Below, one piece after another: positions 16,645-56,858 of a DNA stretch of 64,000 nt. Where the stretch lies: NCBI RefSeq assembly GCF_964194025.1, contig NC_134473.1:63116001-63180000 (forward strand), in the 5' to 3' direction. Under the pieces are notes generated by a model. That model saw nothing but the letters and a program-made list of their open reading frames with translations. It did not search any database and had not been told where the DNA came from. How positions within the stretch are numbered: position 1 is the stretch's first letter; the number at the start of each line of letters is the position of its first letter. A program made the position numbers and the translations under genes. The DNA is from Convolutriloba macropyga (lineage: Eukaryota).

Positions 16645-17097
16645 ATGAGCGAAATAACTTGGGGTACGTCCCAACAGAACCGATTAACTTTAATCCTTGA
16701 TGGACATGAGTTTCAAAAGAAGTTAGAAACAAAAACTACTACGCATTGGAAATGCTCAAAATGGAGCTCTTATAAATGTAAAGTTACGGCCATTACCACT
16801 GGAAAACAATTACTATCCAAGAAAAACGAGCACAACCACGAAATTGTTCCGGGACATGTACAAGCAAAACAGATCATTGGTCAAATGAAGGAGACAGCGA
16901 GAACGGAACAGAACCCAGTAAATAACATGATAATTGCCAGCAGTCTGTTACCAATCGGGTCCGATATTGCAACGCAGCTGTCTTTGCCAACCAGATCTCC
17001 CCATGCACTCCCATGCACTCCCAACACCACCCATAGCTGGTATCGGCAGGTTTTCCTGACTTCTTCCCAGTTCTTTAGTTTCCAATCTTTTTATTAA
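16645..17097 (+). pseudogene. Truncated MULE transposase N-terminus (FLYWCH zinc finger)
   Basis: LILDGHEF...HWKCSKWSSYKCK...EHNHE fits the FLYWCH pattern. Homology ends near 16995 (LSLPT); no DDE domain. Confidence 0.85.
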
Positions 17098-20059: not shown

Positions 20060-23000
20060 GAATGCCGTGTCTTCAAGGAAAAGACACCCTGAGGCAAAGC
20101 TCTGTTTCTATTGCTTGCGTGATAAACACATGTTTAGGCAATGCCCAAGTCCCCGTAAGTGTAGGAAAGATGGCTGCAACAGCTCCCATAACACCTTAAT
20201 TCACGGAGCTGAAAGGGTTTTTCCAGCTAAATCCTCAAATGACAACATCAATAATTCGAAGTCGAATGCAGGTACTAGTAGGCCAACTACTGGTCAACAG
20301 CAACCAAGCAAAACGACCACTTTGTCTTCTGTCACTGATGTCAAAGGACTCCTTCAGGTGACGGAACTGAAACTCACTAATTGTTCTTGTACTAGTACTA
20401 CGGCGTTGGTTTTATGCGATACCGCTTGCAGTAACTCTTGGGTGTCCAATAGTCTCGCAGCTAGACTCGGTTTGCAAGGTACAGCATTAAAACACCGTCA
20501 AGGGTATAAACACAGAAGAAATCATCGACACAAAGGTGGTTCAATTGACCGTGACACCTCATAGAGATCGAGAATTCGAAGAATTTACTGTACGTCCCTA
20601 TGTGAGGGAAACATCAAACGTAGGTTCCGACATCATTATCGTTAAAAACATGCAAGAAACTTACCCACATCTGGCAGTCCTAGATCCAGTAAGAGATAGA
20701 TATGGAGACATTGAGATGATACTAGGACAGGATGTCTACCATGCCATCCGCCCGTTAGAGTATTTTGCAGCCGACGAAAGTGCTCACTGTTCGTTGTCCG
20801 CTTGCCCATAGGTTGGGTTCTAAGCGGCCCACTCCCGTCAAGTTCAAGTTTAGTCTCGACATGCTTGAAAGCCAATATTGAACATGATTATCAACTGGCT
20901 TGTCAAGTTAAGTCATGGTACGATATGGAATCGTACGGCGCGTACAAGCAGGTTGACCCACGATCCGCAGCAGATGCTCGCGCGCAGGAAAAACTTCAAA
21001 CAACAACCTTTCATAACGGCGAAAGATACGGTGTCGGTATGTTATGGGCTGATGACAACATTCAGCTCCCCAATAACTACTTTTTGTCACTGGTGCAACT
21101 TAAATCTCTCGAGAAGCGGCTCTCGAGAGACACAACGTTGAAAGAAAATTACGCTAAGACTATCAGTGAAGACCTGGGAAAAGGTTACGTAATTAAAATC
21201 CCTGATGCTCATATGGTCGCACAGCTGTCGGATAAAGAAAGGTACCTACCACATCATACTGTAATCAACCCGAACAGACCGGGGAAAAGGCGTAGGGTAA
21301 TGAATGGTTCAGCAAAGTTCCACGGTACTTCTTTGAATAAATCTTTGCTCACTGACCCCGACCTACTCCCAAACCTAATCCATGTGCTACTTAGGTTCCG
21401 TCAACATCAATTCACTGTGTCTGCAGATATCGAGGGCATGTTCCTCCAAATGGGTGTCCCTGACTGTGACCAGCCATCACTGCGTTTTTTGTGGCGGGAG
21501 GACCCTGAAACTAATGTTGCAGTGTATCAATACACGCGCCAAATATTTGGGGCTAAAGACTTGCCCACATGCGCCAACTATGCATTGCAACGCACGGCCC
21601 GAGACAACATAGGTCAGTACCCAGAGACAACACTTGCCGTCCTAGAAAACTTTTTACATGGACGATTACTTGGATTCGATGGAATCGCCTGAGGGCTCTC
21701 AATAGATTGAAGAAATTGGTGCATCTTCTCCATTTAGGTGGGTTCAAGCTTACTAAGTTTAAGCAATGTACCAAATCTGGCTGATGAAATTAATGGGTCA
21801 CCTCAGTCCACCGAACCAAAAGTAATCGCCTCATCTAAGGAGGAATCTTCGCATGTGCTTGGGTTGAAATGGGATCACAACAAAGATACTCTAGTTGTGA
21901 GTCGGGGTACCTCCAGTACAGTAAATAAGTCTCTAACACAACGCTTGGTATTGAGCATAGTGTCTAAGGTATTTGATCCCATCGACCTAGTGGCACCATT
22001 TACCGTTGGTTCCCGATTGTTACTAAAGGACGTCTGGCGTGTCGGCGGGCAGCACTGAGATGAAGAATTAACAAAAGACACTGTTGAAAGGTTCCTGGAA
22101 TGGAGTGTAGAACTACCCAAGCATGCCAAAATCACTATATCAAGGAGTGGGCTTCTAGTGGGCTAAAAACAGCTTGCATGTCCTGGGTAAGCTCGCGTAG
22201 CACCTATGAAGGTGATGAAAATTCCAAAGCTAGAGCTGCAAGCTGCCCTACTGGCCGCTCGGTTGAAACAAGACATCTGTCGAGCCCTTACTGTGCATGT
22301 TAACAAAGTTTTTATGTGGACCGATAGCATTACTGTCTTGCAGCGGCTTAACTCCCCAAGCAAGCAGCCAATATTTATTGCAAACCGTGCATGCGAGATT
22401 TTAGAACACACTAGCGTTGATGAATGGAACCACGCTGCCTCAAGCGATAATCCGGCAGATGCCGGTACTCGTGGTATGTCCGCTGAGGTCTTGCAATCAA
22501 GTAGCCGGGTGAGGGGTCCAGATTTCTTAATAACCAAAGAATTCCCGTTCGGTCCAAGCACCGAAGTAGTTAAAATCATCAAACTTGGTATTGTAACTAA
22601 GGAAATTGATGAAACGAATACATCATTGGCCGCATCTGTAACCAAGTCAGATAAGGAGCCACCCCAGCAACTTCCCTTCGATAAGTACAGTTCTTATGAA
22701 AAGTTGCTACGGATAACAGCGCACGCACTCCGCCTGTTACCTTCTCACGAATGTTACCGTAATGCCGATGGTAGCATCGTAGACACCACTGAGCGTGAAG
22801 CCGAACGTCATCTTCAGTACCTCGTGCAAGGGAGCCATTCAATGCGGAGAGAAAAGATCTCCTCGAAAGCAAATCCGTTAAACGGACTAGCCGTATTGCT
22901 CCGTTTTCTCCCTTTATTGGACCAAATTGTCTAATCCGATCGGTCGGTCGCATCAAACGGTTGGTCGAAGTTGACTTTGATGTGAAAGATCCTATCGTTC

Positions 23001-24378
23001 TCGACGCACGCCATGTATTTGTAACGCTGTTCCTTGGGCACACCCACGTTAAACATCATCACCAAGGTATTGACTACCTGCGGGCTAAAAAAACAAGAAC
23101 GTTATATCATCCTCAAATTACGATCCTCACTGCGTTCAATTAAATCCAACTGCGTCACGTGCAAAAAGTTCCGAGCTGCCACTATTCAAACCATCATGCT
23201 GATCTCCCAGTAGAAAGACTCGCATACCAGTCTCCTCCCTTCACGAACACCGGGGTCGACTACTTCGGCCCGTTTTACGTTACTTTACGTAGGACTACCG
23301 AAAAGAGATGGGGTTTCCTCTTCACATGCTTAACTACTTGTGCCGTTCATGTTGAGATCGTTCCGTCCATGGACGCCAGTTTGTGTGTAATGGGAGTGGA
23401 GCGGTTCGTTTCCCGTCGGGTACACCTGCCATTATTTGGTCAGACAATGGCACGAACTTTGTTGGCGCCGATAAATAACTACGCGAGAATATCGAAAAGT
23501 GGAACACCATCAACATCGCCGTCGAACTTGCCCACAAAGGCGTTAAGTGGAGGTTCAATCCGCCCAGTGCGCCACACCAAGCTGGCATCTGGGAGAGGCT
23601 GGTACGTAGTTTTAAGCGAATACTTTACACCATCTTCGGTACTCGTCGCCTCACTGAACGAAGTTTTGAACTCTATTCTTGTCTCGTCGAATATGCAAAT
23701 AACTCAAGCCCATAAGCGCCGACCCGTCCGAGCTAGGCGCAATAACACCTAATCATTTCCTACTCGGTTACCAAGCAACACCAATTCCGTCAATCGTTGG
23801 CGTCGACGAATTCGATCATCGTAAACGGTACGCCCGCGCTCACTCGCATGCTAACACTGTTTGGGCACGTTGGATCAAAGAGTATGTGCAGGCGCTGAAC
23901 CGACGTTCCAAGTGGCAGACGCCTGCCGAGCAACACCTTAAGACTGGCTACTTGGTCTGGGTAGTTGAAGAGACCAACCCAAGGGGTTACTACCCTACTG
24001 CTCGGATCACTGAACTGCGTTACGGTTCCGACAGCGTCGCACGCTCCGTATTGAGCACGTCCACCGGATCACTCGTCCGCCTGCTTGTAAAATTGTTGCC
24101 GATTCTCCCAACATCTTCTCCTGGGCCGGAGGATGTTACTGAGTAAACGAATAATATATCAAAATGCGTCATTTTATAAGCCAATCAGATTTAAGTATAT
24201 AAATTGCGTGCGGAATTGCGTCTAATATGCATAGAAATTTCCAAAAAAAGTTCGTATAACCTAATTTTAAGTAATTAATATCATGATATGCATCAAATAA
24301 GGTGGTTTTCGGCTTAATATTTTCAGGTCCTTTAGACGATTGTTGATCGAATATGAACCGATTCTGATATCAATAACA
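20060..24378 (+). mobile_element. BEL/Pao LTR retrotransposon relic (gag zinc knuckles, protease, RT, RNase H, integrase, partial 3' LTR) in intron 3
   Basis: Gag: CFYCLRDKHMFRQC..C...C..SHNTLIH. Protease: LCDTACS. RT: YLPHH, LLRFRQH, ADIEGMFLQ, LRFLWR, YMDD (about 21655). RNase H region: PKLELQAA, DNPADAGTRG. Integrase: GVDYFGP, FTCLTT.AVH, SDNGTNFVG, WERLV. PPT-like gggccggagga is followed by TGTTA at 24134, with a possible TAACA end at 24378. Frameshifts and an RNase H deletion; no 5' LTR. Confidence 0.97.
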
Positions 24379-36400: not shown

Positions 36401-36511
36401 GCAATTCAGTTAAGAGGGGTTGTAGTTTTCAACAGCTCCCAATCAATTTCAGCAACGAACTTGATTTCAGAACGAGAGGAACTTAGATAAATCAAAAATG
36501 TAATAAATTAC

Positions 36512-37501
36512 CTCTTCCAAAGTCTCACCAATCACAATCAATCCACTATTGGCCACTAAGCATGCTTTCTTTTCCCCTGAATCGAAACACTGAGCAATAC
36601 ATTCCGGTGATGATAATTTGTCGAGCCTACACACCTTGATATCATCGGGAGACAAACTGCTGCAGAGAAAATGAAAATGCGGAATGCACTCATCCAGGCA
36701 AGATAAAATTGATGCACTTTTGGTTGAAGCAAAAATTCCAACATTAATAGACACAGGAAGGCTGTTTAGAAGTTGCCGCATCCAGTCTTTCGAAAATGGA
36801 CATTCCAAATTCTCGGTGCTGTCTCTCGCCACAGCTTTTTTACTGTCTTCATGAAAGCCATTCATTTGCTTACCATTCTCACTGACCGCTTTAGATTGGA
36901 ACACTTCAGTTGGCCAGTGAGTATCACGGCAGTTTTCAGCGTACAGAACAATGTTTCTATCTGTCGGCATTCTGGCACAAACTTTGATTAACAGCATATA
37001 GTTTAGCTTTTGGGAAAGCTTCAAAACGCAGGAGTCAAGCTTTCTTTGAAATAAATGCTCGCCATTTCGTCTCAGAGTAATAGAGAACAATTCTACTTTA
37101 CCAATGAGACATTTCTCCATTAATCCGTGCAGCTCTGCATCTGTCAATGATTGTCTACAAGCTCTGATAAACTCCAAGGTTAGCTTTGCTACGGTCTCTG
37201 CGGTTTCGAAACATTCCGCAATCTCACTTTCCGAAAAGTGTTCAGAAAATAAACAAAGAACCAAAGTTTCATCAGGCTTCAAACTACAAACCAATTCGGA
37301 GTGCAGTTCAACAAGATCGGACCGTTTGTTGTAGATAGCTTGGCAGTTTGATAAACATATAACATGATGAACAATTTCATCGTTTTCATTTCTGTGTCTG
37401 AATTCATCTGCTGTTCTGAAGAAATTCACTGAATGATGATTGCACTCTGCTATTTTTTGCGCATTAATAACATTCAAGATCACATTTCGAAATAATACCA
37501 T
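36512..37501 (-). CDS. Adducin-like / class II aldolase-fold protein, coding exon 1 (330 aa)
   Basis: Long uninterrupted ORF. KACLVANSGLIVIGETLEE matches the class II aldolase/adducin L.NHG....G...EE motif. Canonical donor GAG|GTAATT at 36511, phase 0, in frame with exon 2. Confidence 0.85.
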
Positions 37502-39899: not shown

Positions 39900-42800
39900 G
39901 CTCCTAACAACAAAACCATTGAAAGATTACCTCAACAGATATTATAGGACTCAGACTCCTTTTTTTCGCAGGAAGTAATCCATAAACGTATGAAAAACCA
40001 GGCGAAATAGTTATGATGAATCCAACTTATTTGATATCCATATGACAGCGGGTAAAAATACCAACTCATTTCATAGCCTCACTGAAGAAACTAAAGAAGG
40101 CTGGCTTTTCCTAACTGACAAGGCAGACAACAGATCTGTTCTTCAGATATTACATGAGAAACACCCGAATCAAGCAAACGCTGATCTCAGTTACTTACTC
40201 TGGAATGACAAACCAAATTTGCCCTACCATCACTCAAAATTTGTCGAAGTAAATGTCTCGTCCATAAGAATCTCAGCTATGAAGGAGCATGGAAGCCATG
40301 ACCAATCGCGGCTAAACGCCAAAGAATGCTGCTCTCAACATAAAACAAAGCGACATAAGAATTTTGCAAAACAATTGGTGAAGTAGCAAAATGCGTAGGA
40401 ACTAACAATTTCACATTCCTTATTCCCTATAACACATGTAGGTTGATAGCTCTCGAAAAGTCTGGCGGAGTCCGGCCAACCGAAGTAGGCGAAGTCTCAA
40501 GACATATCATTGTGAGAGGAATCGTGTAATTTGCTATAAAAGATGGAGGAATTTTTCACACAATTCATTCATTGTGAGCAGGTTTTCAAAATAGAGTCGA
40601 AAGCCATCTGTCTTATTGATGCAAAAATTGATTTCATTAGCGTGACCGAAGATCTTGCATTTAAAATGAGTTTAAAACCTTCCTTCCCTTGCTCTGTTCA
40701 ATTCATTTCGTGAGACATCAATTTTACGAGTCCATAGATTTTAGGAACGATTCTATATCAAAAATATATCACAAAAGGCAATCCACTAGCAAATTAAATT
40801 TATGGGAATGCTATAACTGCCTTAATTTTATTTCCAGATATCCCCGCCCGCGTACTTAAAACATCGGAAAATATCCCCACCACTTGTAAGGGTTGAAGTT
40901 TAGACAATCTTTAGACCTTATGGTCCCTTTGTTGAGTACAAGTGATTATTTGAAGACCCTTATCTCTATCAGCAACACAAAATGAGATAAAGCAACAGAA
41001 GAAGCTTCGAATACAAACAAACATAGCTGGCAGATTGCCAGAAAATAGCCGCAATAGATTCGTAGATCGGCAGTCTAAAAAAAAACACTAAAAAAGACAG
41101 ACCAAAAAAATTTGTCTTTTCATTGAAGGCTGATCTGTTAAGTTTTGATTTAAAATCTGTATAAGTTATTGCTCCCTCTATTAGCTGCTCTCTAACAACC
41201 TTCATTTAGAGTGACACACACCCATTTGACCTTATCTCTTTGAATTAAAGTAAATAAAAGTCAACATCAAAGTGAGGAAGTCATTTTTGAGAGTGGGGTG
41301 AGTCAAGTGTGACCAAAAATTTAATCAGGCGAATGAACAAAAAACTAGCTCCACTAAGAACGAAAAATGACGTCACGCATGCAATTCAGTTGGAATTGCA
41401 TGAACGAATGAACAAAAAGTGGCTGTGACTTCATATGGTCGTAACAAAAACCATGACGACGAAATAAAAAACATAGCAGGACAAGTCCTGAAATACAATC
41501 GAAAGAATTGAATGAAAAACAAACCTAATGAACCTTACCAGCAGATCAATTGAACAATCCCAACCATGAAGACAAAAAGTTGAGAACCCAAAAGAATCAA
41601 ACAAACTAAACAAAAAAAATCATTGCTAAAACTCTTGGAGCCTTTAACCTGAAGGCCATAGATGACACAGTTCAAAATTATCATTAATTCACGGACAAGC
41701 TTTGCAAGAGATTATTTTGCCACTGAATGTAGATAAACTCGAGAGCTTCAAAAAAACTGAGAAAAGCAAAATTTAAAGAAAGTTTCTATATGTCGCTTGA
41801 AAAAAAGTTAAAAACCAATCATTTTTATCTTTGGAATTCTGTCAGGTAACACATCTGCAAGACTTAGAAAAGCTTCAAGGGACAAAAAAGGTCGTTAAAC
41901 TCAGAAAATGAATTCTAAGAATTCTAAACATTTAAAAAAAATGTTTTTCAGAAAAATTCAAGAAAATTTTAACAAAGTCTTGCTAAAAACGTGATATTGT
42001 AATCTTCAGAACTCTTTCATTGTCTCCGGAGACCATCCATTGAACCTTTTGCAAGCGTTGAATAGCTTCACTGGCTCAAAAAGGTCCACAAAATTGTAAC
42101 ATGATAAAAATTTTTAGAAAATTTTAAAAAATTGTAATTTTATCAAGATATTGCTGAAATTCGTGTTGTTAGTCTATTGATATGCATTCCTTTACCTCTA
42201 TCAACTATGCAGTAACTGATTATCAAACTGTGGAGGAGTTCCCTGGGCTGTGGTGCAGGAAAAACTCAAAAATTTTCAATACGTTAAAAAAACTTGAAAA
42301 ATAGCAAGTTTTATTTTTAAAAACCTGCTAAAATTTGTGATTTTAAAAAGTTGACAACAATTTTATTGCCACTAGAAACTATGCAGCAACAAACTTGAAA
42401 ACCTCATAGAAGGTTCCCTGGCCAGTGAGAAAAAATACTAAATTTACAGAAATTTAAAAAAATGCAGTTTTTCTTTTAAAAAATCGCTAAATTCGAAATA
42501 CTAAAATCTTGAAACACATTCCCCATTACAAATAAAGCTATGCAGTAAATTGACTATGCAATAAAACCACTCCACTACCACTAGAAATTATGCAATAAAC
42601 TATTATTAAAACCAAGAGGAGGCTTCTTGAAACCAGGGGCTGAAAAACCCCAAAAATTGTCAAAAACCTTGAAAAATTTTTTTAAGAATTTGTATAAATT
42701 TGGGCGTTTACGTTTGGAGTACCAAAACATATAGCTCTTAAAATGGCCATAAAACGTAATTACTTCACGTCAAACACCATTATGAAGCTTCACAAAGCTC

Positions 42801-43490
42801 AATATCGGACTGGTCCAACAAAAAAATTGGAAAAACGACGAAAAAATGCAAAAATTTGCAACAATTTGAGCTCAAAAACTCCTAAAATTGACCTTATAAC
42901 CTTGAATTACGGCCTTCCCAGTAGCTTCAACACTCTAAGCACATGAAGGACACCTAAAGCCCGCTGAGCTTCACCTGTTTATCCCTTTTTGAAAGCTCAA
43001 AGTTATGAAAAGATGTGAAAACATCTTGCAAAAATAATAAAAAAAGAAAATTGAGCATCAAGTTGGCTGAGAGGAATGCCACTAACGATACCATTTTGTC
43101 ATTAAAAAGCGAATTTGGTGATGATACTGCCTGAAGTTAATGCTGTAATTCAACTGTGTGTTTGCCTGCAGAGATGATACAACGTTAGACTTTCACGCTA
43201 ATGTTTTTGTCACGCTAATCATTGTTTAGCATACCTTTTTTTCGGCCGCAGAATTTTCAGTTTGTTGCCAAAAAAAACTCCACTATCAAAGGATGAATTA
43301 TGTTAGAAAGCATTTTCATGCCCTCTTCCGCTTCCGTTCGATCGCACTGGTGGATCTTACTTTTAACCATCGAAGGTGATTAAAGATTTAGCCTGAAAGT
43401 AGTAGTAGTTCAGGATTTAGGGTCTTCCCAGGGGTGCTTCGGGGACTCCCTTGCTTTCGTGTCGAATTTTTAACCGAACTTCGTTAGCGG
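39900..43490 (+). mobile_element. Degenerate CRE-like (restriction-like endonuclease) non-LTR retrotransposon, interrupted at 41021-43046
   Basis: LQILHEKHP and CRLIALEKSGGVRP.EVGEV.RHII appear before the interruption. After it come ASSWL.GMPL..YHF, CAC and a VEIFN-like RLE segment near 43460. Confidence 0.75.
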
Positions 43491-43556
43491 GTTGCACAGC
43501 CCACACTATTATAAGTTACCTGCTAACAAGACTAGTCAATAATAATTAATTAATTA

Positions 43557-43593
43557 CAACAAACGTTTTCGCTTAACTAGCATCATCAGGTTA
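43557..43593 (-). ncRNA. Minimal type I hammerhead ribozyme, copy 1
   Basis: Minus strand reads UAAC-CUGAUGA-U-GCU(AGUUA)AGC-GAA-AACGUU-U-GUUG. This gives the core boxes, a 3-bp stem II, a palindromic stem III and stem I UAAC/GUUG. Confidence 0.8.
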
Positions 43594-45087
43594 GGAAATT
43601 TTAACAACCTAAAGTTGGAGTGTTTACAACTAAAATGATTTGAACTTATCATTTGAGTTTGTCACGATTTCATATGTTCAAACTCTGAAATTTGAATTGA
43701 ACGAAGTTTTTCTCTCAATTGCATCCAGTTTTGCAAAATTTTTGCTGTTTTTCATTCATTTTCTTTGAACTTTTTTATTTCATTTCCTTGAATGGCACTA
43801 TTTTTCAAACTTTCACAATCATTTGGTATTCGATTTCATCAGCATGTAATTTTTGAAAGAAATTTTGAAACTTGTAAACTAATATTTGAGTGTTAGCTCT
43901 CTGCTCCTGTAATCGTGCCGCGTGTTAAGTGCCGGCTTCCGCTGCGCAAAGTAAATGGCTTCCAGTGTCATTAGTTATTGCGAGTCGTTGCACTAATCAA
44001 TGACACGCCATTCAAAAGCTCGCGAAGTGCCACAACGTTTACAAAATGTACAACTGGGAAGTCTGTTTTTTGATGCTCCGAAATCCTTGTGGCGATATGT
44101 CTGCAGATCTGCCCGACACATGGTATCCAATTAAAACAGAAGAGGCTAATTGAGAAACTGCAAAAAGACGCCACCAAATGGATATGCTTGTCTGAATCTG
44201 AATACACAAAGCGCTTCATAGAAACGGAACTGTTACCAGTGTCACTCTACGCAAAACTCCAAAGCTTTTTTTATTGTACTGCTCGGTTATTGTTGGAAGA
44301 TACGACATCGAAATTACAATTTTATCATATCAAGGCAAACGAGAGAACGAGACAAAATATCTTCACCACTTGTAAGGTTTTAAGTTTAGACAATTGTTAG
44401 ACCTTAAGAATCCTTTGTTGAGTACAAGTGATTATTTGAATACCCTTATCTCTATCAGCAACAAAAAATGAGATAAAGCAAAAGAAGAAGCTTCGAATAC
44501 AAACAAAAACGACAGATATATTATGGATGAATTTATTAAAATTGAGTATCGCCCACTTGATTTCACTTTTGAAAATTGAACATCAAGTTGGCTGAGAGGA
44601 ATGCCACTAACGATACCATTTTGTCATTAAAAAGCGAATTTGGTGATGATACAGCCTGAAGTTAATGCTGTAATTCGACTGTGTTTGTGCCTGCAGAGAT
44701 GATACAACGTAAGACTTTCACGTTGATGTTTTTATTACGCTAATCATTGTTTAGCATACTTTTTTTGGCCGCAGAAATTGCAATCTACTGCCAAAAAAGT
44801 ATTTCCACTATCAAAGGATGAATTATGTCAGAAAGCATTCTCATGCCCTCTTCCGCTTCCGTTTGATCGCACTGATGGATTTTATTTTTAACCATCGAAG
44901 GTGATTAAAGAATTAACCTGAAAGTAGCAGTAGTTCCGGCTTTAGGGACTTCCCAGGCGTGCTTTGAGCTTTGAGACTACCTTGCTTTCGTGTCGAATTT
45001 TTAACCAAATTTCGTTAGTGGGTTGCACAGCCCACACTATTATAATTTATTTGCTAACAGGACTAGTCAATAATAATTAATTAATTA

Positions 45088-45124
45088 CAACAAACGTTTT
45101 CGCATAACTAGCATCATCAGGTTA
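45088..45124 (-). ncRNA. Minimal type I hammerhead ribozyme, copy 2 (stem II variant)
   Basis: Same motif, but stem II is GCUAGUUAUGC (third pair lost). Confidence 0.65.
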
Positions 45125-46610
45125 GGAAATTTTAACAACCTAAAGTTGGAGTATTTACAACTAAAATGATTTGAATTTATCATGTGAGTTTGTCACGATT
45201 TCATATATACAAAATCTGAAAATTAAATTGAACGAAATTTTTCTCTCAATTGGATCCAGTTTTGCAAAATTTTTGCTGTTTTTCATTCCTTTTCTTTTAA
45301 CTTTTTTATTTCATTTCCTTGAATGGCACTCTTTTTCAAAATTTCGCAGTCATTTGGAATTCGATCTCATCAATGGGTAAATTTTGAAAGGAATTGTGAA
45401 ACATGTAAACCAATATTTGAGTGTTAGCTCTCTGCTCCTGTAATCATGCCGCGTGATAAGTGCCGGCTTCCGCTGCGCAAAGTAAATGGCTTCCAGTGTC
45501 ATTAGTTATTGCGAGTCCTTGCACTAATCAATGACACGCCATTCAAAAGCTCGCGAAGTGCCACAACGTTTACAAAATGTACAACTGGGAAGTCTGTATT
45601 TTGATGCTCCGAAATCCTTGTGGCGATATGTCTGCAGGTCTGCCAAACATATGGTATCCAATTAAAACAGAAGAGGCTAATTGAGAAACTGCAAAAAAGA
45701 CGCCAACAAATGGATATGCTGGTCTGAATCTGATTACACAAAGCGCTTCATAGAAACGGAACTGTTACCAGGGTCACTCTAAGCAAAACTGCAAAGCTTT
45801 TTTATTGTACTGCTTGGTTATTGTTGGAAGGTACGACATCGAAATTACAGTTTTATCATATCAAGGCAAACGAGAGAACGAGACAAAATATCGTCACCAC
45901 CTGTAAGGGTTGAAGTTTAGACAGTCTTTAGACCTTATGAATCCTTTGTTGAATACAATTGATTACTTAAAGACCCTTATCTCTATCAGCAACAAAAAAT
46001 GAGATAATGCAACAGAAGGAGCTTCGAATACAAACAAAAACGACAGATATATTATGGATGAATTAATTAAAATTGAATATCGCCCACTTGATTTCACTTT
46101 TGAAAATTGAGCATCAATTTGGCTGAGAGAATGCCACTAACGATACCATTTTGTCATTTAAAAGCGAATTTGGTGATGATACTGCCTGAAGTTAATGCTG
46201 TAATTCGACTGTGTGTGTGCCTGCAGAACTGATACAACGTTAGATTTTCACGCTAATGTTTTTGTCACGCTAATCATTGTTTAGCATAGCTTTTTTTCGG
46301 CCGCAGCATTTGCAGTCTACTGCCAAAAAAAATTCCACTATCAAAGGATGAATTATGTCAAAAAGCATTCTTATGCCCTCTTCAGCTTCCGTTCGATCGC
46401 ACTGTTGGATCTCACTTTTAACCATCGAAGGTGATTAAAGATTTAGCCTGAAAGTAGTAGTAGTTCAGGATTTAGGGTCTTCCCTGGCGTGCTTTGAGAC
46501 TCCCTTGCTTTCGTGTAGAATTTTTAACCAAATTTCGTTAGTGTGTTGCACAGCCCACACTATTATAATTTATTTGCTAACAGGACTAGTCAATAATAAT
46601 TAATTAATTA

Positions 46611-46647
46611 CAACAAACGTTTTCGCATAACTAGCATCATCAGGTTA
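46611..46647 (-). ncRNA. Minimal type I hammerhead ribozyme, copy 3 (stem II variant)
   Basis: Identical to copy 2. Confidence 0.65.
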
Positions 46648-48135
46648 GGAAATTTTAACAACCTAAAGTTGGAGTATTTACAACTAAAATGATTTGAATT
46701 TATCATGTGAGTTTGTCACGATTTCATATATACAAAATCTGAAAATTAAATTGAACGAAATTTTTCTCTCAATTGGATCCAGTTTTGCAAAATTTTTGCT
46801 GTTTTTCATTCCTTTTCTTTTAACTTTTTTATTTCATTTCCTTGAATGGCACTCTTTTTCAAAATTTCGCAGTCATTTGGAATTCGATCTCATCAATGGG
46901 TAAATTTTGAAAGGAATTGTGAAACATGTAAACCAATATTTGAGTGTTAGCTCTCTGCTCCTGTAATCATGCCGCGTGATAAGTGCCGGCTTCCGCTGCG
47001 CAAAGTAAATGGCTTCCAGTGTCATTAGTTATTGCGAGTCCTTGCACTAATCAATGACACGCCATTCAAAAGCTCGCAAAGTGCCACAACGTTTACAGAT
47101 TGTACAACTGGGAAGTCTGTTTTTTGATGCTCCGAAATCCTTTTGGCGATATTTCCGCAGATCTGCCCGACACATGGTATCCAATTAGAACCGAAGAGGC
47201 TAATTGAGAAACTGCAAAAAGACGCCACCAAATGGATATGCTTGTCTGAATCTGAATACACAAAGCGCTTCATAGAAACGGAACTCTTACCAGGGGCACT
47301 CTAAGCAAAACTGCAAAGCTTTTTTATTGTACTGCTTGGTTATTGTTGGAAGGTACGACATCGAAATTACAGTTTTATCATATCAAGGCAAACGAGAGAA
47401 CGAGACAAAATATCGTCACCACCTGTAAGGGTTGAAGTTTAAACAATCTTTAGACCTTATGAATCCTTTGTTGAGTACAATTGATTATTTAAAGACCCTT
47501 ATCTCTATCAGCAACAAAAAAATGAGATAAAGCAACAGAAGAAGCTTCGAATACAAAAAAAAACGACAGATATTTTATGGATGAATTAATTAAAATTGAA
47601 TATCGCCCACTTGATTTCACTTTTGGAAATTGAGCATCAAGTTGGCTGAGAGGAATGCCACTAACGATATCATTTTGTCATTAAAAAGCGAATTTGGTGA
47701 TGATACTGCCTGAAGTTAATGCTGTAATTCGACTGTGTGTGTGCCTGCAGAGATGATACAACGTTAGACTTTCACGCTAATGTTTTTGTCACGCTAATCA
47801 TTGTTTATCATACCTTTTTTTCGGCCGCAGAAATTGCAATCTACTGGCAGAAAGTATTTCCACTATCAAAGGATGAATTATGTCAGAAAGCATTCTCATG
47901 CGCTCTTCGGCTTCCGTTTGATCGCACTGGTGGATCTTACTCTTGACAATCGAAGGTGATTAAAGGTCTAGCCTGAAAGTAGCAGTAGTTCAGACTTTAG
48001 GGACTTCCCAGGCGTGTTTTGAGACTCCCTTGTTTTCGTGTCGAATTTTTAACCGAACTTCGTTAGCGGGTTGCACAGCCCACACTATTATAAATTACCT
48101 GCTAACAGGACTAGTCAATAATAATTAATTAATTA

Positions 48136-48172
48136 CAACAAACGTTTTCGCTTAACTAGCATCATCAGGTTA
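48136..48172 (-). ncRNA. Minimal type I hammerhead ribozyme, copy 4
   Basis: Identical to copy 1. Confidence 0.8.
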
Positions 48173-49658
48173 GGAAATTTTAACAACCTAAAGTTGGAGT
48201 ATTTACAACTAAAATGATTTGAATTTATCATGTGAGTTTGTCACGATTTCATATATACAAAATCTGAAATTTAAATTGAACGAAATTTTTCTCTCAATTG
48301 CATCCAGTTTTGCAAAATTTTTGCCGTTTTCATTCCTTTTCTTTTAACTTCTTTATTTCATTTCCTTGAATGGCACTCTTTTTCAAAATTTCGCAATCAT
48401 TTGAAATTCGATTTCATCAACATGTAGATTTTGAAAGAAATTTTGAAACATGTAAACTAATATTTGAGTGTTAGCTCTCTGCTCCTGTAATCATAACGCG
48501 TGTTAAGTGCCGGCTTCCGCTGCGCAAGGTAAATGGCTTCCAGTGTCATTAGTTATTGCGAGTCCTTGCACTAATCAATGACACGCCATTCAAAAGCTCG
48601 CAAAGTGCCACAACGTTTACAGATTGTACAACTGGGAAGTCTGTTTTTTGATGCTCCGAAATCCTTTTGGCGATATTTCCGCAGATCTGCCCGACACATG
48701 GTATCCAATTAAAACCGAAGAGGCTAATTGAGAAACTGCAAAAAGACGCCACCAAATGGATATGCTTGTCTGAATCTGAATACACAAAGCGCTTCATAGA
48801 AACGGAACTGTTACCAGGGTCACTCTAAGCAAAACTGCAAAGCTTTTTTATTGTACTGCTTGGTTATTGTTGGAAGGTACGACATCGAAATTACAGTTTT
48901 ATCATATCAAGGCAAACGAGAGAACGAGACAAAATATCGTCACCACCTGTAAGGGTTGAAGTTTAGACAATCTTTAGACCTTATGAATCCTTTGTTGAGT
49001 ACAATTGATTATTTAAAGACCCTTATCTCCATCAGCAACAAAAAAAATGAGATAAAGCAACAGAAGAAGCTTCGAATACAAAAAAACGACAGATATATTA
49101 TGGATGAATTTATTAAAATTGTATATCGCCCACTTGATTTCACTTTTGAAAATTGAGCATCAAGTTGGCTGAAAGGACTGCCACTAACGATACCATTTTG
49201 TCATTAAAAAGCGAATTTGGTGATGATACTGCCTGAAGTTAATGCTGTAATTCGACTGTGTGTGTGCCTGCAGAGATGATACAACGTTAGACTTTCACGC
49301 TAATGTTTTTGTCACGCTAATCATTGTTTATCATACCTTTTTTTCGGCCGCAGAAATTGCAATCTGCTGCCAGAAAGTATTTCCACTATCAAAGGATGAA
49401 TTATGTCAGAAGGCATTCTCATGCGCTCTTCGGCTTCCGTTTGATCGCACTGGTGGATCTTACTCTTGGCCATCGAAGGTGATTAAAGGCTTAGCCTGAA
49501 AGTAGCAGTAGTTCAGGCTTTAGGGACTTCCCAGGCGTGTTTTGGGACTCCCTTGTTTTCGTGTCGAATTTTTAACCGAACTTCGTTAGCGGGTTGCACA
49601 GCCCACACTATTATAAGTTACCTGCTAACAAGACTAGTCAATAATAATTAATTAATTA

Positions 49659-49695
49659 CAACAAACGTTTTCGCTTAACTAGCATCATCAGGTTA
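49659..49695 (-). ncRNA. Minimal type I hammerhead ribozyme, copy 5
   Basis: Identical to copy 1. Confidence 0.8.
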
Positions 49696-51181
49696 GGAAA
49701 TTTTAACAACCTAAAGTTGGAGTGTTTACAACTAAAATGATTTGAACTTTTCATCTGAGTTTGTCATGATTTCATATATACAAAATCTGAAATTTAAATT
49801 GAACGAAATTTTTCTCTCAATTGCATCCAGTTTTGCAAAATTTTTGCCGTTTTCATTCCTTTTCTTTTAACTTCTTAATTTCATTTCCTTGAATGGCACT
49901 CTTTCTCAAAATTTTGCAATCTTTTGAAATTCGATTTCATCAACATGTAAATTTTGAAAGAAATTTTGAAACATGTAAACTAATATTTGAGTGTTAGCTC
50001 TCTGCTCCTGTAATCATACCGCGTGTTAAGTGCCGGCTTCCGCTGCGCAATGTAAATGGCTTCCAGTGTCATTAGTTTTTGCGAGTCGTTGCACTAATCA
50101 ATGACACGCCATTCAAAAGCTCGCGAAGTGCCACAACGTTTACAAGTTGTACAATTGGGAAGTCTGTATTTTGATGCTCCGAAATCCTTGTGGCGATATG
50201 TCTGCAGGTCTGCCAAACATATGGTATCCAATTAAAACAGAAGAAGCTAACTGAGAAACTGCAAAAAGACGCCACCAAATGGATATGCTTGTCTGAATCT
50301 GAATACACAAAGCGCTTCATAGAAACGGAACTGTTACCAGGGTCACTCTAAGCAAAACTGCAAAGCTTTTTTATTGTACTGCTTGGTTATTGTTGGAAGG
50401 TGCGACATCGAAATTACAGTTTTATCATATCAAGGCAAACGAGAGAACGAGACAAAATATCGTCACCACCTGTAAGGGTTGAAGTTTAGACAATCTTTAG
50501 ACCTTATGAATCCTTTGTTGAGTACAATTGATTATTTAAAGACCCTTATCTCCATCAGCAACAAAAAAAATGAGATAAAGCAACAGAAGAAGCTTCGAAT
50601 ACAAAAAAACGACAGATATATTATGGATGATTTTATTAAAATTGTATATCGCCCACTTGATTTCACTTTTGAAAATTGAGCATCAAGTTGGCTGAAAGGA
50701 CTGCCACTAACGATACCATTTTTTCATTAAAAAGCGAATTTGGTGATGATACTGCCTGAAGTTAATGCTGTAATTCGACTGTGTGTGTGCCTGCAGAGAT
50801 GATACAACGTTAGACTTTCACGCTCATGTTTTTGTCACGCTAATCATTGTTTATCATACCTTTTTATCGGCCGCAGAAATTGCAATCTGCTGCCAGAAAG
50901 TATTTCCACTATCAAAGGATGAATTATGTCAGAAGGCATTCTCATGCGCTCTTCGGCTTCCGTTTGATCGCACTGGTGGATCTTACTCTTGACCATCGAA
51001 GGTGATTAAAGGCTTAGCCTGAAAGTAGCAGTAGTTCAGGCTTTAGGGACTTCCCAGGCGTGTTTTGGGACTCCCTTGTTTTCGTGTCGAATTTTTAACC
51101 GAACTTCGTTAGCGGGTTGCACAGCCCACACTATTATAAGTTACCTGCTAACAAGACTAGTCAATAATAATTAATTAATTA

Positions 51182-51218
51182 CAACAAACGTTTTCGCTTA
51201 ACTAGCATCATCAGGTTA
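51182..51218 (-). ncRNA. Minimal type I hammerhead ribozyme, copy 6
   Basis: Identical to copy 1. Confidence 0.8.
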
Positions 51219-52706
51219 GGAAATTTTAACAACCTAAAGTTGGAGTGTTTACAACTAAAATGATTTGAAATTTCATCTGAGTTTGTCATGATTTCATATA
51301 TACAAAATCTGAAATTTAAATTGAACGAAATTTTTCTCTCAATTGCATCCAGTTTTGCAAAGTTTTTGCCGTTTTCATTCCTTTTCTTTTAACTTCTTAA
51401 TTTCATTTCCTTGAATGGCACTCTTTCTCAAAATTTTGCAATCATTTGAAATTCGATTTCATCAACATGTAAATTTTGAAAGAAATTTTGAAACATGTAA
51501 ACTAATATTTGAGTGTTAGCTCTCTGCTCCTGTAATCATACCGCGTGTTAAGTGCCGGCTTCCGCTGCGCAAGGTAAATGGCTTCCAGTGTCATTAGTTT
51601 TTGCGAGTCGTTGCACTAATCAATGACACGCCATTCAAAAGCTCGCGAAGTGCCACAACGTTTACAAGTTGTACAATTGGGAAGTCTGTATTTTGATGCT
51701 CCGAAATCCTTGTGGCGATATGTCTGCAGGTCTGCCAAACATATGGTATCCAATTAAAACAGAAGAAGCTAACTGAGAAACTGCAAAAAGACGCCACCAA
51801 ATGGATATGCTTGTCTGAATCTGAATACACAAAGCGCTTCATAGAAACGGAACTGTTACCAGGGTCACTCTAAGCAAAACTGCAAAGCTTTTTTATTGTA
51901 CTGCTTGGTTATTGTTGGAAGGTACGACATCGAAATTACAGTTTTATCATATCAAGGCAAACGAGAGAACGAGACAAAATATCGTCACCACCTGTAAGGG
52001 TTGAAGTTTAGACAATCTTTAGACCTTATGAATCCTTTGTTGAGTACAATTGATTATTTAAAGACCCTTATCTCTATCAGCAACAAAAAAAATGAGATAA
52101 AGCAACAGAAGAAGCTTCGAGTACAAAAAAAAACGACAGATATATTATGGATGAATTTATTAAAATTGTATATCGCCCACTTGATTTCACTTTTGAAAAT
52201 TGAGCATCAAGTTGGCTGAAAGGACTGCCACTAACGATACCATTTTGTCATTAAAAAGCGAATTTGGTGATGATACTGCCTGAAGTTAATGCTGTAATTC
52301 GACTGTGTGTGTGCCTGCAGAGATGATACAACGTTAGACTTTCACGCTAATGTTTTTGTCACGCTAATCATTGTTTATCATACCTTTTTTTTCGGCCGCA
52401 GAAATTGCAATCTGCTGCCAGAAAGTATTTCCACTATCAAAGGATGAATTATGTCAGAAGGCATCCTCATGCGCTCTTCGGCTTCCGTTTGATCGCACTG
52501 GTGGATCTTACTCTTGACCATCGAAGGTGATTAAAGGCTTAGCCTGAAAGTAGCAGTAGTTCAGGCTTTAGGGACTTCCCAGGCGTGTTTTGGGACTCCC
52601 TTGTTTTCGTGTCGAATTTTTAACCGAACTTCGTTAGCGGGTTGCACAGCCCACACTATTATAAGTTACCTGCTAACAAGACTAGTCAATAATAACTAAT
52701 TAATTA

Positions 52707-52743
52707 CAACAAACGTTTTCGCTTAACTAGCATCATCAGGTTA
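52707..52743 (-). ncRNA. Minimal type I hammerhead ribozyme, copy 7 (in the parent Penelope 3' end)
   Basis: Identical to copy 1. Lies about 285 nt downstream of the GIY-YIG stop, on the Penelope sense strand. Confidence 0.8.
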
Positions 52744-53271
52744 GGAAATTTTAACAACCTAAAGTTGGAGTGTTTACAACTAAAATGATTTGAACTTTTC
52801 ATCTGAGTTTGTCATGATTTCATATATACAAAATCTGAAATTTAAATTGAACGAAATTTTTCTCTCAATTGCATCCAGTTTTGCAAAATTTTTGCCGTTT
52901 TCATTCCTTTTCTTTTAACTTCTTAATTTCATTTCCTTGAATGGCACTCTTTTTCAAAATTTCGCAATCATTTGAAATTCGATTTCAGCAACATGTAAAT
53001 TTTGAAAGAAATTTTGAAACATGTAAACTAATATTTGAGTGTTAGCTCTCTGCTCCTGTAATCATACCGCGTGTTAAGTGCCGGCTTCCGCTGCGCAAGG
53101 TAAATGGCTTCCAGTGTCATTAGTTTTTGCGAGTCGTTGCACTAATCAATGACACGCCATTCAAAAGCTCGCGAAGTGCCACAACGTTTACAAGTTGTAC
53201 AATTGGGAAGTCTGTTTTTTGATGCTCCGAAATCCTTGTGGCGATATGTCTGCAGGTCTGCCAAACATATG

Positions 53272-53686
53272 GTATCCAATTAAAACAGAAGAAGCTAACT
53301 GAGAAACTGCAAAAAGACGCCACGAAATGGATATGCTGGTCTGAATCTGATTACACAAAGCGCGACATAGAAACGGAACTGTTACCAGTGTCATTCTACG
53401 CAAAACTCCAATGTTTTTTTATTCTACTGCTCGGTTATTGTTGGAAGATACGACATTGAAATTAGCAAATTTTATCATATTAAGGCAAACGAGAGAACGA
53501 GACAAAGCACCAACAATGAGATTGTAAGACATATGAGTATAACTAATGCACCTGGAGAATATTCTGTTTTTGTAGAAATCGCGACCCGCACAACAAACTC
53601 ATTGTCCACTGAAGATACAAAAGGGGTACTTGCAACAGCCCCGGCATGAGGTCGCAAACCTGACCTACTACTGCTACTACTACAAC
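53272..53686 (+). mobile_element. 5'-truncated LINE 3' end inserted in the Penelope GIY-YIG, 8-bp TSD
   Basis: TSD aacatatg at 53264-53271 and 53687-53694. EKLQKDATKWI...YTKR.IETELLPVS is a LINE ORF2 C-terminal motif. (TAC)n-like tail. Confidence 0.9.
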
Positions 53687-55612: not shown

Positions 55613-55755
55613 NNNNNNNNNNNNNNNNNNNNNNNNNNNNNNNNNNNNNNNNNNNNNNNNNNNNNNNNNNNNNNNNNNNNNNNNNNNNNNNNNNNNNNNN
55701 NNNNNNNNNNNNNNNNNNNNNNNNNNNNNNNNNNNNNNNNNNNNNNNNNNNNNNN
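55613..55755. other. Assembly gap (143 N)
   Basis: Run of n. Confidence 1.
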
Positions 55756-56858
55756 NTGTGGTTATGGCTGTCAGTAATCAGCACTAGTGTAAATCTATGG
55801 CCATGTTCGCAAAAATTAGCAAAATTGATGTTAAAACTTTGTTATACCATTCACTAATCGCAAATTTTAACGCATAGTTTTTTTTGCAAATTGGACAATA
55901 TTGGACAAAAATTTTCTAAATGCCCAATGTCAATTTGAAATTTATAACGTTGACCTTAATTTGCAATTAATTTACGTCTCTCATTATAATTTGCAAGTTT
56001 TTTACAATTTTGAAAGAATAAGGCAAAAAAACGCTGAAGTCGCAATTAACTCTAGCTGGTTGGTCAACATTCAAGCCAAAAAAGCCCTGAATTGAAAGTT
56101 TTGCAGCACCGACAATTCCTGCGCACATATATTTTTTGAAATACTCAATCGATGTAAATCATATTCAAGTTGACATCCTTCTCTGCTTTTCAGCACTCTC
56201 GAAAATTTTTTAAGATCACTTTCCAGAGAAGTGATAGCACATGCTGAGGAAGACGTTTGTATTCGGCACATCTAGTGAATCAAACTGGATAGACCATGAC
56301 TGAAGACAAATCACGCGAAAAGTAATCTGATGCAGAGAAATCAAACCTGTCTAGCAAACTTGAGTAACACATGGACGGATGCCATGTCATGTACAGAAAG
56401 TGTTAGATTGTATATGAATTCATTTGTGCTAGAATTATAATGAAACGGGTACTGATGTACCACTTTTCCCCTTTACAAAAACAAAACTTAAGCAAAGCGT
56501 ATTTTCTTTTCGTTAAATGGTTCAAGAAATTAAAAAGCAATTGTTAAACAACAAACAAAAAGTGTGGGTTTTAATGCAGCTTTATTGTTGTATTTTTATA
56601 TCCAATTTACAAGCTGCCTAAGTTTGAGTTTTTGACTTCCGGAACTCTTCGAGCACGCTCATCGAAATTGGCCGAGATGTATTCCTGAACCCCTGTTGGC
56701 AATTGTGGCAAAACTGTGTCTAGTTTGGTGAATCAGGGGCGATGGCTTTCGCTACAAAAGTGTCTGTATCCCTTTGACAAATGGTACCTCGCGGTGCAAC
56801 TGGGGTAAATGCAGATGGGTTTTTTTGGATAGATGGAGTAGAATGAACTTGTGGCTGT

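What the first reader, a model, noticed from the sequence alone, without database searches (positions are those of the whole stretch)
40868..53506. Seven hammerhead ribozymes spaced about 1.52 kb apart: a Penelope-derived, giant retrozyme-like tandem array
Seen in the sequence: every unit carries on the minus strand UAAC-CUGAUGA-U-GCU(AGUUA)AGC-GAA-AACGUU-U-GUUG, at 43557, 45088, 46611, 48136, 49659, 51182 and 52707. The core boxes and the palindromic stem III are invariant in all 7 copies. Established: minimal type I hammerheads with a tiny palindromic stem III occur in Penelope pLTRs and metazoan non-LTR retrozymes, and self-cleave mainly as dimers; described animal retrozyme monomers are only a few hundred nt. 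Inference: tandem amplification puts partner ribozymes in cis, so a minus-strand read-through transcript could be cut into about 1.52-kb monomers, possibly circularised and copied by a Penelope RT in trans. This would be a route from transposon junk to an unusually large, chimeric retrozyme. Caveats: the predicted cleavage triplet is UUU (suboptimal), and the invariance may only reflect recent amplification.
Basis: partly seen in the sequence, partly recalled or inferred. Interest (0 to 1): 0.82.

Follow-up and report, generated by a model that had tools for sequence, protein, structure and literature searches.

The report
Hammerhead motifs copied in a local duplication
Seven copies of a small self-cutting-RNA motif are really there, but they are passengers in a stretch of old transposon debris that was duplicated seven times on the spot, not a new giant mobile ribozyme element.

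Summary
Seven hammerhead-like motifs lie on the minus strand about 1,524 nt apart, inside a tandem array at 40868-53506. One correction: two of the seven carry a change that breaks a stem II pair.

The motif is the usual minimal type I hammerhead of a Penelope-like element (PLE) family of this genome. It has the bulged base after A9, the G10.1-C11.1 pair and a palindromic AACGUU helix III. Across PLE subfamilies, stem II changes by compensatory swaps.

The 'giant retrozyme' reading is not supported:
- Only 597 nt of each unit is PLE, namely a 5'-truncated 3' end. The rest is a LINE fragment, a 107-nt repeat and 567 nt found nowhere else in the 1.18-Gb genome.
- The array is exactly 7.0 units long.
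- Its upper edge cuts through the LINE fragment, which continues into the flank. The segment was therefore duplicated in place as DNA.
- Stem II in the array has 3 or 2 pairs, against 4 in the family.
- The motif's invariance is not unusual: 8.6% of equal-sized windows vary as little.
- No RNA data exist for this organism, so transcription and cleavage are untested.

The scan's first readers noted similar PLE hammerheads elsewhere in this genome. Verdict: ordinary, low interest.

The parts
40868..53506 (-). Tandem array of exactly 7.0 units of about 1,524 nt, interrupted by one later insertion
   Evidence: Unit BLAST against the window; repeat families with 1522-1531 nt spacing. Length less the 2,023-nt insert plus about 60 deleted nt, divided by 1,524, gives 7.0.
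43557..43593 (-). Hammerhead motif 1 (stem II GCU/AGC, 3 bp)
45088..45124 (-). Hammerhead motif 2 (stem II 3' strand UGC, leaving only 2 bp)
46611..46647 (-). Hammerhead motif 3 (stem II 3' strand UGC, leaving only 2 bp)
48136..48172 (-). Hammerhead motif 4
49659..49695 (-). Hammerhead motif 5
51182..51218 (-). Hammerhead motif 6
52707..52743 (-). Hammerhead motif 7
48100..48696 (-). Segment B of the unit (example unit): the 597-nt 5'-truncated 3' end of a Penelope-like element. It starts inside the GIY-YIG motif (CVGQ..RISEHQK), carries the hammerhead, then has a ~40-nt tail.
   Evidence: More than 40 dispersed genome copies at 74-83% identity all cover this part and stop ~40 nt after the cleavage site. 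The protein match to a PLE endonuclease ORF in L048 has E=4e-7. Relatives of the ORF just upstream in that L048 PLE copy carry RVT_1 and GIY-YIG domains.
48697..48933 (+). Segment A of the unit (example unit): a 237-nt internal fragment of a LINE-like element, from the ORF2 C-terminal region, oriented on the plus strand
   Evidence: Dispersed copies at 74-84% identity lie at loci different from those of B. RT ORFs lie nearby in L043 and L044.
49501..49607 (-). Segment D of the unit (example unit): a 107-nt piece of another dispersed repeat
   Evidence: More than 30 genome copies at about 80% identity
48934..49500 (-). Unique 567-nt segment of the unit (example unit), present only in this array
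   Evidence: The genome search gave 8 candidates, all 8 were scored and all lie inside the array.
53507..53685 (+). Continuation of the same LINE-like copy beyond the array edge, in its original context
   Evidence: Alignments to L039-L044 and L047 run unbroken from 53268 to 53531 across the edge at 53506, then resume at 53533-53685.
41023..43045 (+). Later 2,023-bp insertion of a very abundant repeat into the last unit, with about 60 nt of the unit lost
   Evidence: 11,588 first-look candidates

Best explanation
This is a local, DNA-level tandem duplication of a 1.52-kb patch of dead transposon fragments, seven units long and of macrosatellite type. On the minus strand the patch holds, in order: a LINE fragment, the 597-nt 3' end of a 5'-truncated Penelope-like element, a 107-nt repeat piece and 567 nt of unique DNA. 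The PLE piece brought its family's ordinary minimal type I hammerhead motif, so each duplication copied the motif along with everything else. Inferred history: a first duplication joined the end of the unique part to a point inside the LINE fragment, at a junction sharing TTT. Unequal crossing-over then expanded the array stepwise; units are 93-99% identical and neighbours are the most alike. Later an abundant repeat inserted into the last unit. The hammerheads are passengers. If a minus-strand read-through RNA exists, neighbouring motifs could in principle pair through AACGUU, but nothing here shows that they do.
For: (1) The unit is a mosaic: A, B and D belong to three unrelated dispersed families found at different loci. 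(2) The 567-nt unique part occurs only in the array; all 8 candidates in 1.18 Gb were scored and all lie in the array. (3) The array is 7.0 units; it begins at unit position 727 and ends at 729. (4) LINE homology runs unbroken across the upper edge 53506 into the flank, so the first unit sits in its original context and the edge is a breakpoint inside an older element. (5) The junctions share TTT. (6) Unit identities run from 99.1% between neighbours to 93%. (7) There is no sign of constraint: 12.3% of columns vary, the hammerhead window has 1 variable column in 41, and 8.6% of all such windows do as well. That one change breaks a stem II pair. (8) Family copies have a 4-bp stem II, GCUA/UAGC; the array has lost one base, leaving 3 or 2 bp. 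(9) A contig from another sample bridges the 53506 edge.
Against: Transcription and cleavage were not tested, since no RNA run of this organism is on record. Tandem arrays carrying this PLE hammerhead recur in the genome. There is a ~1.1-kb-period array on C7, and an unchecked first-reader note (s1-244489) describes another such array with captured host DNA. A PLE-linked way of forming arrays is therefore not excluded. The array motif has GUUG where the family has GUUU, which adds a U-G pair to stem I.
Confidence: 0.8

Rival explanations
1. One reading: the array arose as DNA, but a minus-strand read-through transcript is cut by paired hammerheads into ~1.52-kb monomers, possibly circularised. 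That would be an accidental long retrozyme-like RNA without mobility.
For: Seven same-strand motifs have an intact CUGAUGA/GAAA core, the bulged U, G10.1-C11.1 and palindromic AACGUU. Dimeric action of such motifs is documented (PMC4209133, PMC7229834). Stem I gains a U-G pair compared with the family.
Against: PLE minimal hammerheads cleave poorly even as dimers (PMC4209133). The Anolis PLE hammerhead cleaved only when protein was added, and no RNA-seq reads ended at its cut site (PMC11167929). Stem II here is cut to 3 or 2 bp. The double-hammerhead fold scores -5.7 and -4.1 kcal/mol, against -12.9 and -14.1 for the best folds. The partner motifs are 1.5 kb apart. No promoter or RNA evidence exists.
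Confidence: 0.1
2. One reading: the unit is a mobile, chimeric giant retrozyme, amplified through circular RNA and rolling-circle reverse transcription by a PLE enzyme.
For: The layout is tandem with one hammerhead per unit. Active-looking PLE copies with RT and endonuclease ORFs exist in the genome. A PLE origin for animal retrozymes has been proposed (bioRxiv 10.64898/2026.07.22.740005).
Against: There are no dispersed copies of the unit. The array edge lies inside a LINE copy that continues into the flank. The number of units is an integer, and the edges are not at the PLE 3' end, where PLE reverse transcription would be expected to start (my inference from PMC11167929). The unit is 3 to 10 times the 150-450 bp of described monomers (PMC7229834).
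Confidence: 0.03
3. PLE 3' ends, or their hammerheads, promote long-period tandem arrays in this genome, so the array is a by-product of PLE biology rather than of ordinary unequal exchange.
For: PLE copies here commonly sit in 2.1-3.3-kb tandem arrays. A run of more than 33 kb with ~1.1-kb period carries the same motif on C7. The unchecked note s1-244489 reports another hammerhead array with host DNA. PLEs are known to insert as tandems (PMC8557442, PMC11167929).
Against: This array's breakpoints lie in a LINE fragment and in unique DNA, far from the PLE ends. The genome also has long-period arrays noted without any hammerhead (unchecked note s1-217419). No enrichment test was possible.
Confidence: 0.05
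4. The array is an assembly artefact, a collapsed or over-expanded repeat.
For: Long, near-identical repeats are prone to misassembly. The runs that hold the sequence all come from one study, which may be the assembly's own source.
Against: The units differ by 1-7% in an ordered gradient, and one carries a private insertion. Contigs from three samples fit at 99% or better, many at only one place, and one bridges the edge.
Confidence: 0.02

Closest known systems
Minimal type I hammerheads of Penelope-like elements (Cervera and De la Pena 2014, PMC4209133)
   Same: The CUGAUGA and GAAA cores, an unpaired base between positions 9 and 10.1, G10.1-C11.1, a palindromic helix III with no real stem, and a short (4-bp) helix I. 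The motif lies in the non-coding 3' part of a PLE, downstream of the GIY-YIG domain, followed by a ~40-nt tail (PMC8557442).
   Different: Helix II is short: 4 bp in this family and 3 or 2 bp in the array, against 6-8 bp in the schistosome and fly examples. The cleavage triplet is UUU. Here the motif sits in a dead, 5'-truncated fragment that was multiplied by DNA duplication.
Metazoan non-LTR retrozymes (Cervera and De la Pena 2020, PMC7229834; PLE origin proposed in bioRxiv 10.64898/2026.07.22.740005)
   Same: Head-to-tail repeats with low GC content and one type I hammerhead per monomer, all on one strand. There is sequence kinship to PLE terminal regions.
   Different: The monomer is 1,524 nt rather than 150-450 bp. 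The hammerhead is the minimal PLE variant without loop 1-loop 2 contacts. The unit is a mosaic that includes unique DNA, occurs at a single locus, shows no sign of mobility, and has no RNA evidence.
Ordinary long-period tandem duplications (macrosatellites) expanded by unequal crossing-over
   Same: An integer number of units, breakpoints at arbitrary points in pre-existing sequence, a short shared junction (TTT), neighbouring units the most alike, and later private insertions.
   Different: Nothing essential. The only special feature is that the duplicated segment happens to contain a ribozyme motif.

Membership tests
Penelope-type minimal hammerhead | Conserved core: C3-U-G-A-N-G-A9 and G12-A-A14, with an NUH cleavage site | tested here: met
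   CUGAUGA, GAA and UUU followed by the cut site are present in all 7 copies. N7 varies (U, A, C) across subfamilies, as the core allows.
Penelope-type minimal hammerhead | An unpaired base between A9 and G10.1, plus a G10.1-C11.1 pair | tested here: met
   A bulged U followed by G...C is present in all array copies. In the 73 genome matches the bulged base is nearly always present, and G10.1-C11.1 holds in most; a few decayed copies depart from it.
Penelope-type minimal hammerhead | Palindromic positions around helix III, which allow a double hammerhead | tested here: met
   AACGUU is invariant in the array.
Penelope-type minimal hammerhead | Helix II supported by compensatory changes | tested here: met
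   At family level, GCUA/UAGC, GAAC/GUUC and GGCU/AGCC all keep pairing. In the array itself helix II is reduced to 3 or 2 bp.
Penelope-type minimal hammerhead | Location in the terminal non-coding region of an RT plus GIY-YIG element | tested here: met
   There is an endonuclease remnant upstream on the same strand. Family copies have RT ORFs, and relatives carry PF00078 and PF01541.
Penelope-type minimal hammerhead | Self-cleavage | not testable with these tools
   This needs in vitro transcription or RNA end mapping. Rfam models miss even the intact family copies.
Non-LTR retrozyme | Tandem repeats with one type I hammerhead per monomer | tested here: met
Non-LTR retrozyme | Short monomer (150-450 bp) with a canonical hammerhead that has loop 1-loop 2 contacts | tested here: not met
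   The monomer is 1,523-1,531 nt. The motif is minimal, with no closed loop 1.
Non-LTR retrozyme | Mobile: the same repeat found at many loci | tested here: not met
   The unique part of the unit is found only in this array. No hit spans the A/B or B/D junctions elsewhere.
Non-LTR retrozyme | Expressed as linear and circular monomer RNAs | not testable with these tools
   No RNA run is on record for this organism.

The most novel reading that the evidence does not exclude
A DNA-level duplication has by accident placed seven weak Penelope hammerheads in cis. A minus-strand read-through RNA is cut, through double hammerheads, into ~1.5-kb linear or circular RNAs. This could be part of a wider habit of this genome, in which PLE 3' ends seed long-period arrays that capture host DNA (the ~1.1-kb array on C7; note s1-244489).
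Probability: 0.06. Interest if true: 0.6.

Novelty: new member of a known kind. Interest (0 to 1): 0.2.

Why it matters
As it stands this matters little. It adds one more PLE family with the known minimal hammerhead, and it shows that tandem ribozyme motifs can arise by plain segmental duplication. It is a useful caution: regular spacing and invariance of ribozyme motifs in an array do not by themselves indicate a retrozyme. Breakpoints, flanks and dispersed copies have to be checked first. If the array RNA were in fact cleaved, it would show how a retrozyme-like RNA could be born from junk. No evidence here points that way.

Tried and rejected
- Rfam at gathering threshold and at E<=10, including a 121-nt stretch, gave no hammerhead match. 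It also gave none on intact family copies, so the negative is uninformative.
- TRF cannot see the array because its longest period is 500.
- Pfam on the repeated 82-aa ORF found nothing meaningful. Pfam also missed GIY-YIG in the L048 endonuclease ORF. PLE identity was established through BLASTP and through the domains of homologues.
- Conservation of the hammerhead among 30 dispersed copies is 0.88 against a mean of 0.84, ranking 127 of 561 windows. This shows no special constraint, as expected for dead copies.
- Thermodynamic folding does not favour the double-hammerhead fold in either the array or the family copies. This is not discriminating.
- Two RNA run searches found no RNA run. The runs that were laid hold contigs totalling about the genome's size, so they are probably DNA; they say nothing about expression. 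Depth ratios were not used as copy numbers.
- The flank below 40868 and the 2-kb insert show no homology to the LINE family.
Full report
**Observation.** The 28-nt core pattern occurs exactly seven times, all on the minus strand, with none in 100 shuffles. Read on the minus strand, each site gives UAAC-CUGAUGA-U-GCU-AGUUA-AGC-GAA-AACGUU-U-GUUG.
- Two copies (low ends 45093 and 46616) read UGC instead of AGC, which removes one stem II pair.
- BLAST of one unit against the window shows head-to-tail units of about 1,524 nt from 53506 down to 43046. A foreign 2,023-bp block follows at 41023-43045, then the rest of the last unit at 41022-40868.
- After removing the insert and adding back about 60 lost bases, the array is 7.0 units. 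It begins at unit position 727 and ends at 729.

**Is it a hammerhead?** No Rfam model matches at any threshold. The same models also miss better-formed relatives elsewhere in the genome, so this says nothing about this minimal type.
- The motif has every trait listed for minimal hammerheads of Penelope-like elements in PMC4209133: the two core boxes, an unpaired base between A9 and G10.1, the G10.1-C11.1 pair, a palindromic helix III region and a 4-bp helix I.
- A genome-wide pattern search finds 73 such motifs, against 0 for the reversed control.
- Among the matches, stem II appears as GCUA/UAGC, GAAC/GUUC and GGCU/AGCC. These are double compensatory changes at three pairs with G10.1-C11.1 fixed, and N7 varies freely.
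- At family level the hammerhead call is therefore sound.

**What the unit is made of.** Genome searches with parts of the unit show four pieces. Unit coordinates below take position 1 as window 49659, read on the minus strand.
- **Segment B** (unit 964 to 36 of the next unit, 597 nt) matches more than 40 dispersed copies at 74-83% identity.
  - It begins inside a GIY-YIG endonuclease motif. The array's 82-aa ORF aligns to a PLE endonuclease ORF in L048 (E=4e-7).
  - Neighbouring ORFs in those copies are reverse transcriptase, and their relatives carry PF00078 and PF01541.
  - B ends about 40 nt after the cleavage site. This fits the published picture of hammerheads near PLE 3' ends followed by a 30-40-bp tail (PMC8557442).
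- **Segment A** (unit 727-963) belongs to a different family found at different loci. It is a LINE-like ORF2 C-terminal fragment oriented on the plus strand.
- **Segment D** (unit 53-159) is a 107-nt piece of a third repeat.
- **The remaining 567 nt** occur nowhere else: 8 candidates in 1.18 Gb, all scored, all inside this array.

Only 39% of the unit is Penelope-derived, and the chimeric unit has no dispersed copy.

**How the array arose.**
- The LINE-like homology does not stop at the array's upper edge. Alignments to seven independent copies run unbroken from 53268 to 53531, across 53506, and resume at 53533-53685. The first unit is therefore still joined to its original neighbour, and the unit boundary is a breakpoint inside an older element.
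- The internal junctions, the upper edge and the lower edge share only TTT, plus a patchy CTTACA..GGTG resemblance.
- An integer number of units, breakpoints at arbitrary places and short junction homology are the marks of a duplication in place, later expanded by unequal exchange.
- Unit identities fit this: 99.1% between units 5 and 6, 97-98% for the next neighbours, and about 93% for the lowest full unit.
- A multimeric cDNA inserted from a circular RNA would not be continuous with the flank. If PLE reverse transcription starts near the element's 3' end, as PMC11167929 suggests, its edge should also lie near the PLE 3' end. That last step is my inference.

**Is the motif under constraint here?** No.
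- Of the alignment columns, 12.3% vary among the six full monomers. The hammerhead window has one variable column in 41, and 8.6% of all windows of that size vary as little.
- That one change breaks a stem II pair.
- The source family's stem II has 4 bp with a GUUA loop. The array copies have lost one base, giving 3 bp or 2 bp.
- One change goes the other way: the array has GUUG where the family has GUUU, adding a U-G pair to helix I.
- Predicted energies do not favour the double-hammerhead fold in any version: -5.7 and -4.1 kcal/mol for the array and -7.3 for a family copy, against -12.9 to -15.3 for the best folds. Such models ignore tertiary contacts, so this is weak evidence.
- Published PLE hammerheads cleave poorly even as dimers (PMC4209133). 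The Anolis one needed protein and left no read ends at its site (PMC11167929).

**RNA and assembly.**
- No RNA run of this organism is on record.
- The runs that hold the sequence have contig totals close to the genome's size, so they are probably DNA. They show array-specific contigs in three samples and one contig bridging 53506. This argues against an assembly artefact but says nothing about expression.

**Comparison and verdict.**
- The motif is a member of the known Penelope-type minimal hammerheads.
- The array resembles non-LTR retrozymes only in layout. It fails on monomer size (150-450 bp in PMC7229834), hammerhead type and mobility. Expression is untested.
- The idea that animal retrozymes descend from PLE termini is already published (bioRxiv 10.64898/2026.07.22.740005).
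- The most likely reading (0.8) is an ordinary segmental tandem duplication with ribozyme motifs as passengers.
- There is one residual lead. Arrays carrying this hammerhead recur in the genome, in a run of more than 33 kb with ~1.1-kb period on C7 and in 2-3-kb PLE arrays. The scan's first readers noted similar motifs and one hammerhead array with host DNA elsewhere in this genome. Those notes are unchecked.

Noticed in passing
G000:C7:50391329-50424202 (outside the window): At least 17 exact copies of the same Penelope-type hammerhead (loop variant GAUA) lie on one strand, spaced ~1.1 kb or multiples of it. This is an array of more than 33 kb with ~1.1-kb period, and a better retrozyme-like candidate than the finding.
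   Followed up: no
L045 (G000:C16:22733000-22742900); L048 and L049 (G000:C7:47057000-47076800): Penelope-like copies with RT and GIY-YIG ORF pieces, plus a PHD-like CxxC..H..C stretch, sit in tandem arrays of 2.1-3.3-kb units that are 84-99% identical.
   Followed up: partly
window 41023-43045: A 2,023-bp insertion of a very abundant composite repeat (11,588 first-look candidates). Sub-parts 1-487, 1-634 and 1-920 recur separately at 84-95% identity.
   Followed up: partly
window 48549-48797 (-) and the equivalent in most units: An 82-aa ORF recurs in five of the units (79 aa in another). It is a chance read-through from the LINE fragment into the dead GIY-YIG remnant, with no meaningful Pfam match.
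   Followed up: yes
window 16645-17097 (+); 20067-23752 (+); 36467-37501 (-): A FLYWCH zinc-finger ORF (E=5e-12), BEL/Pao-type retrotransposon remnants (Peptidase_A17), and an ORF with a class II aldolase/adducin domain. The surroundings are repeat-rich.
   Followed up: no
window 55613-55756: A run of 144 N, either an assembly gap or masked. It was left as it is.
   Followed up: no
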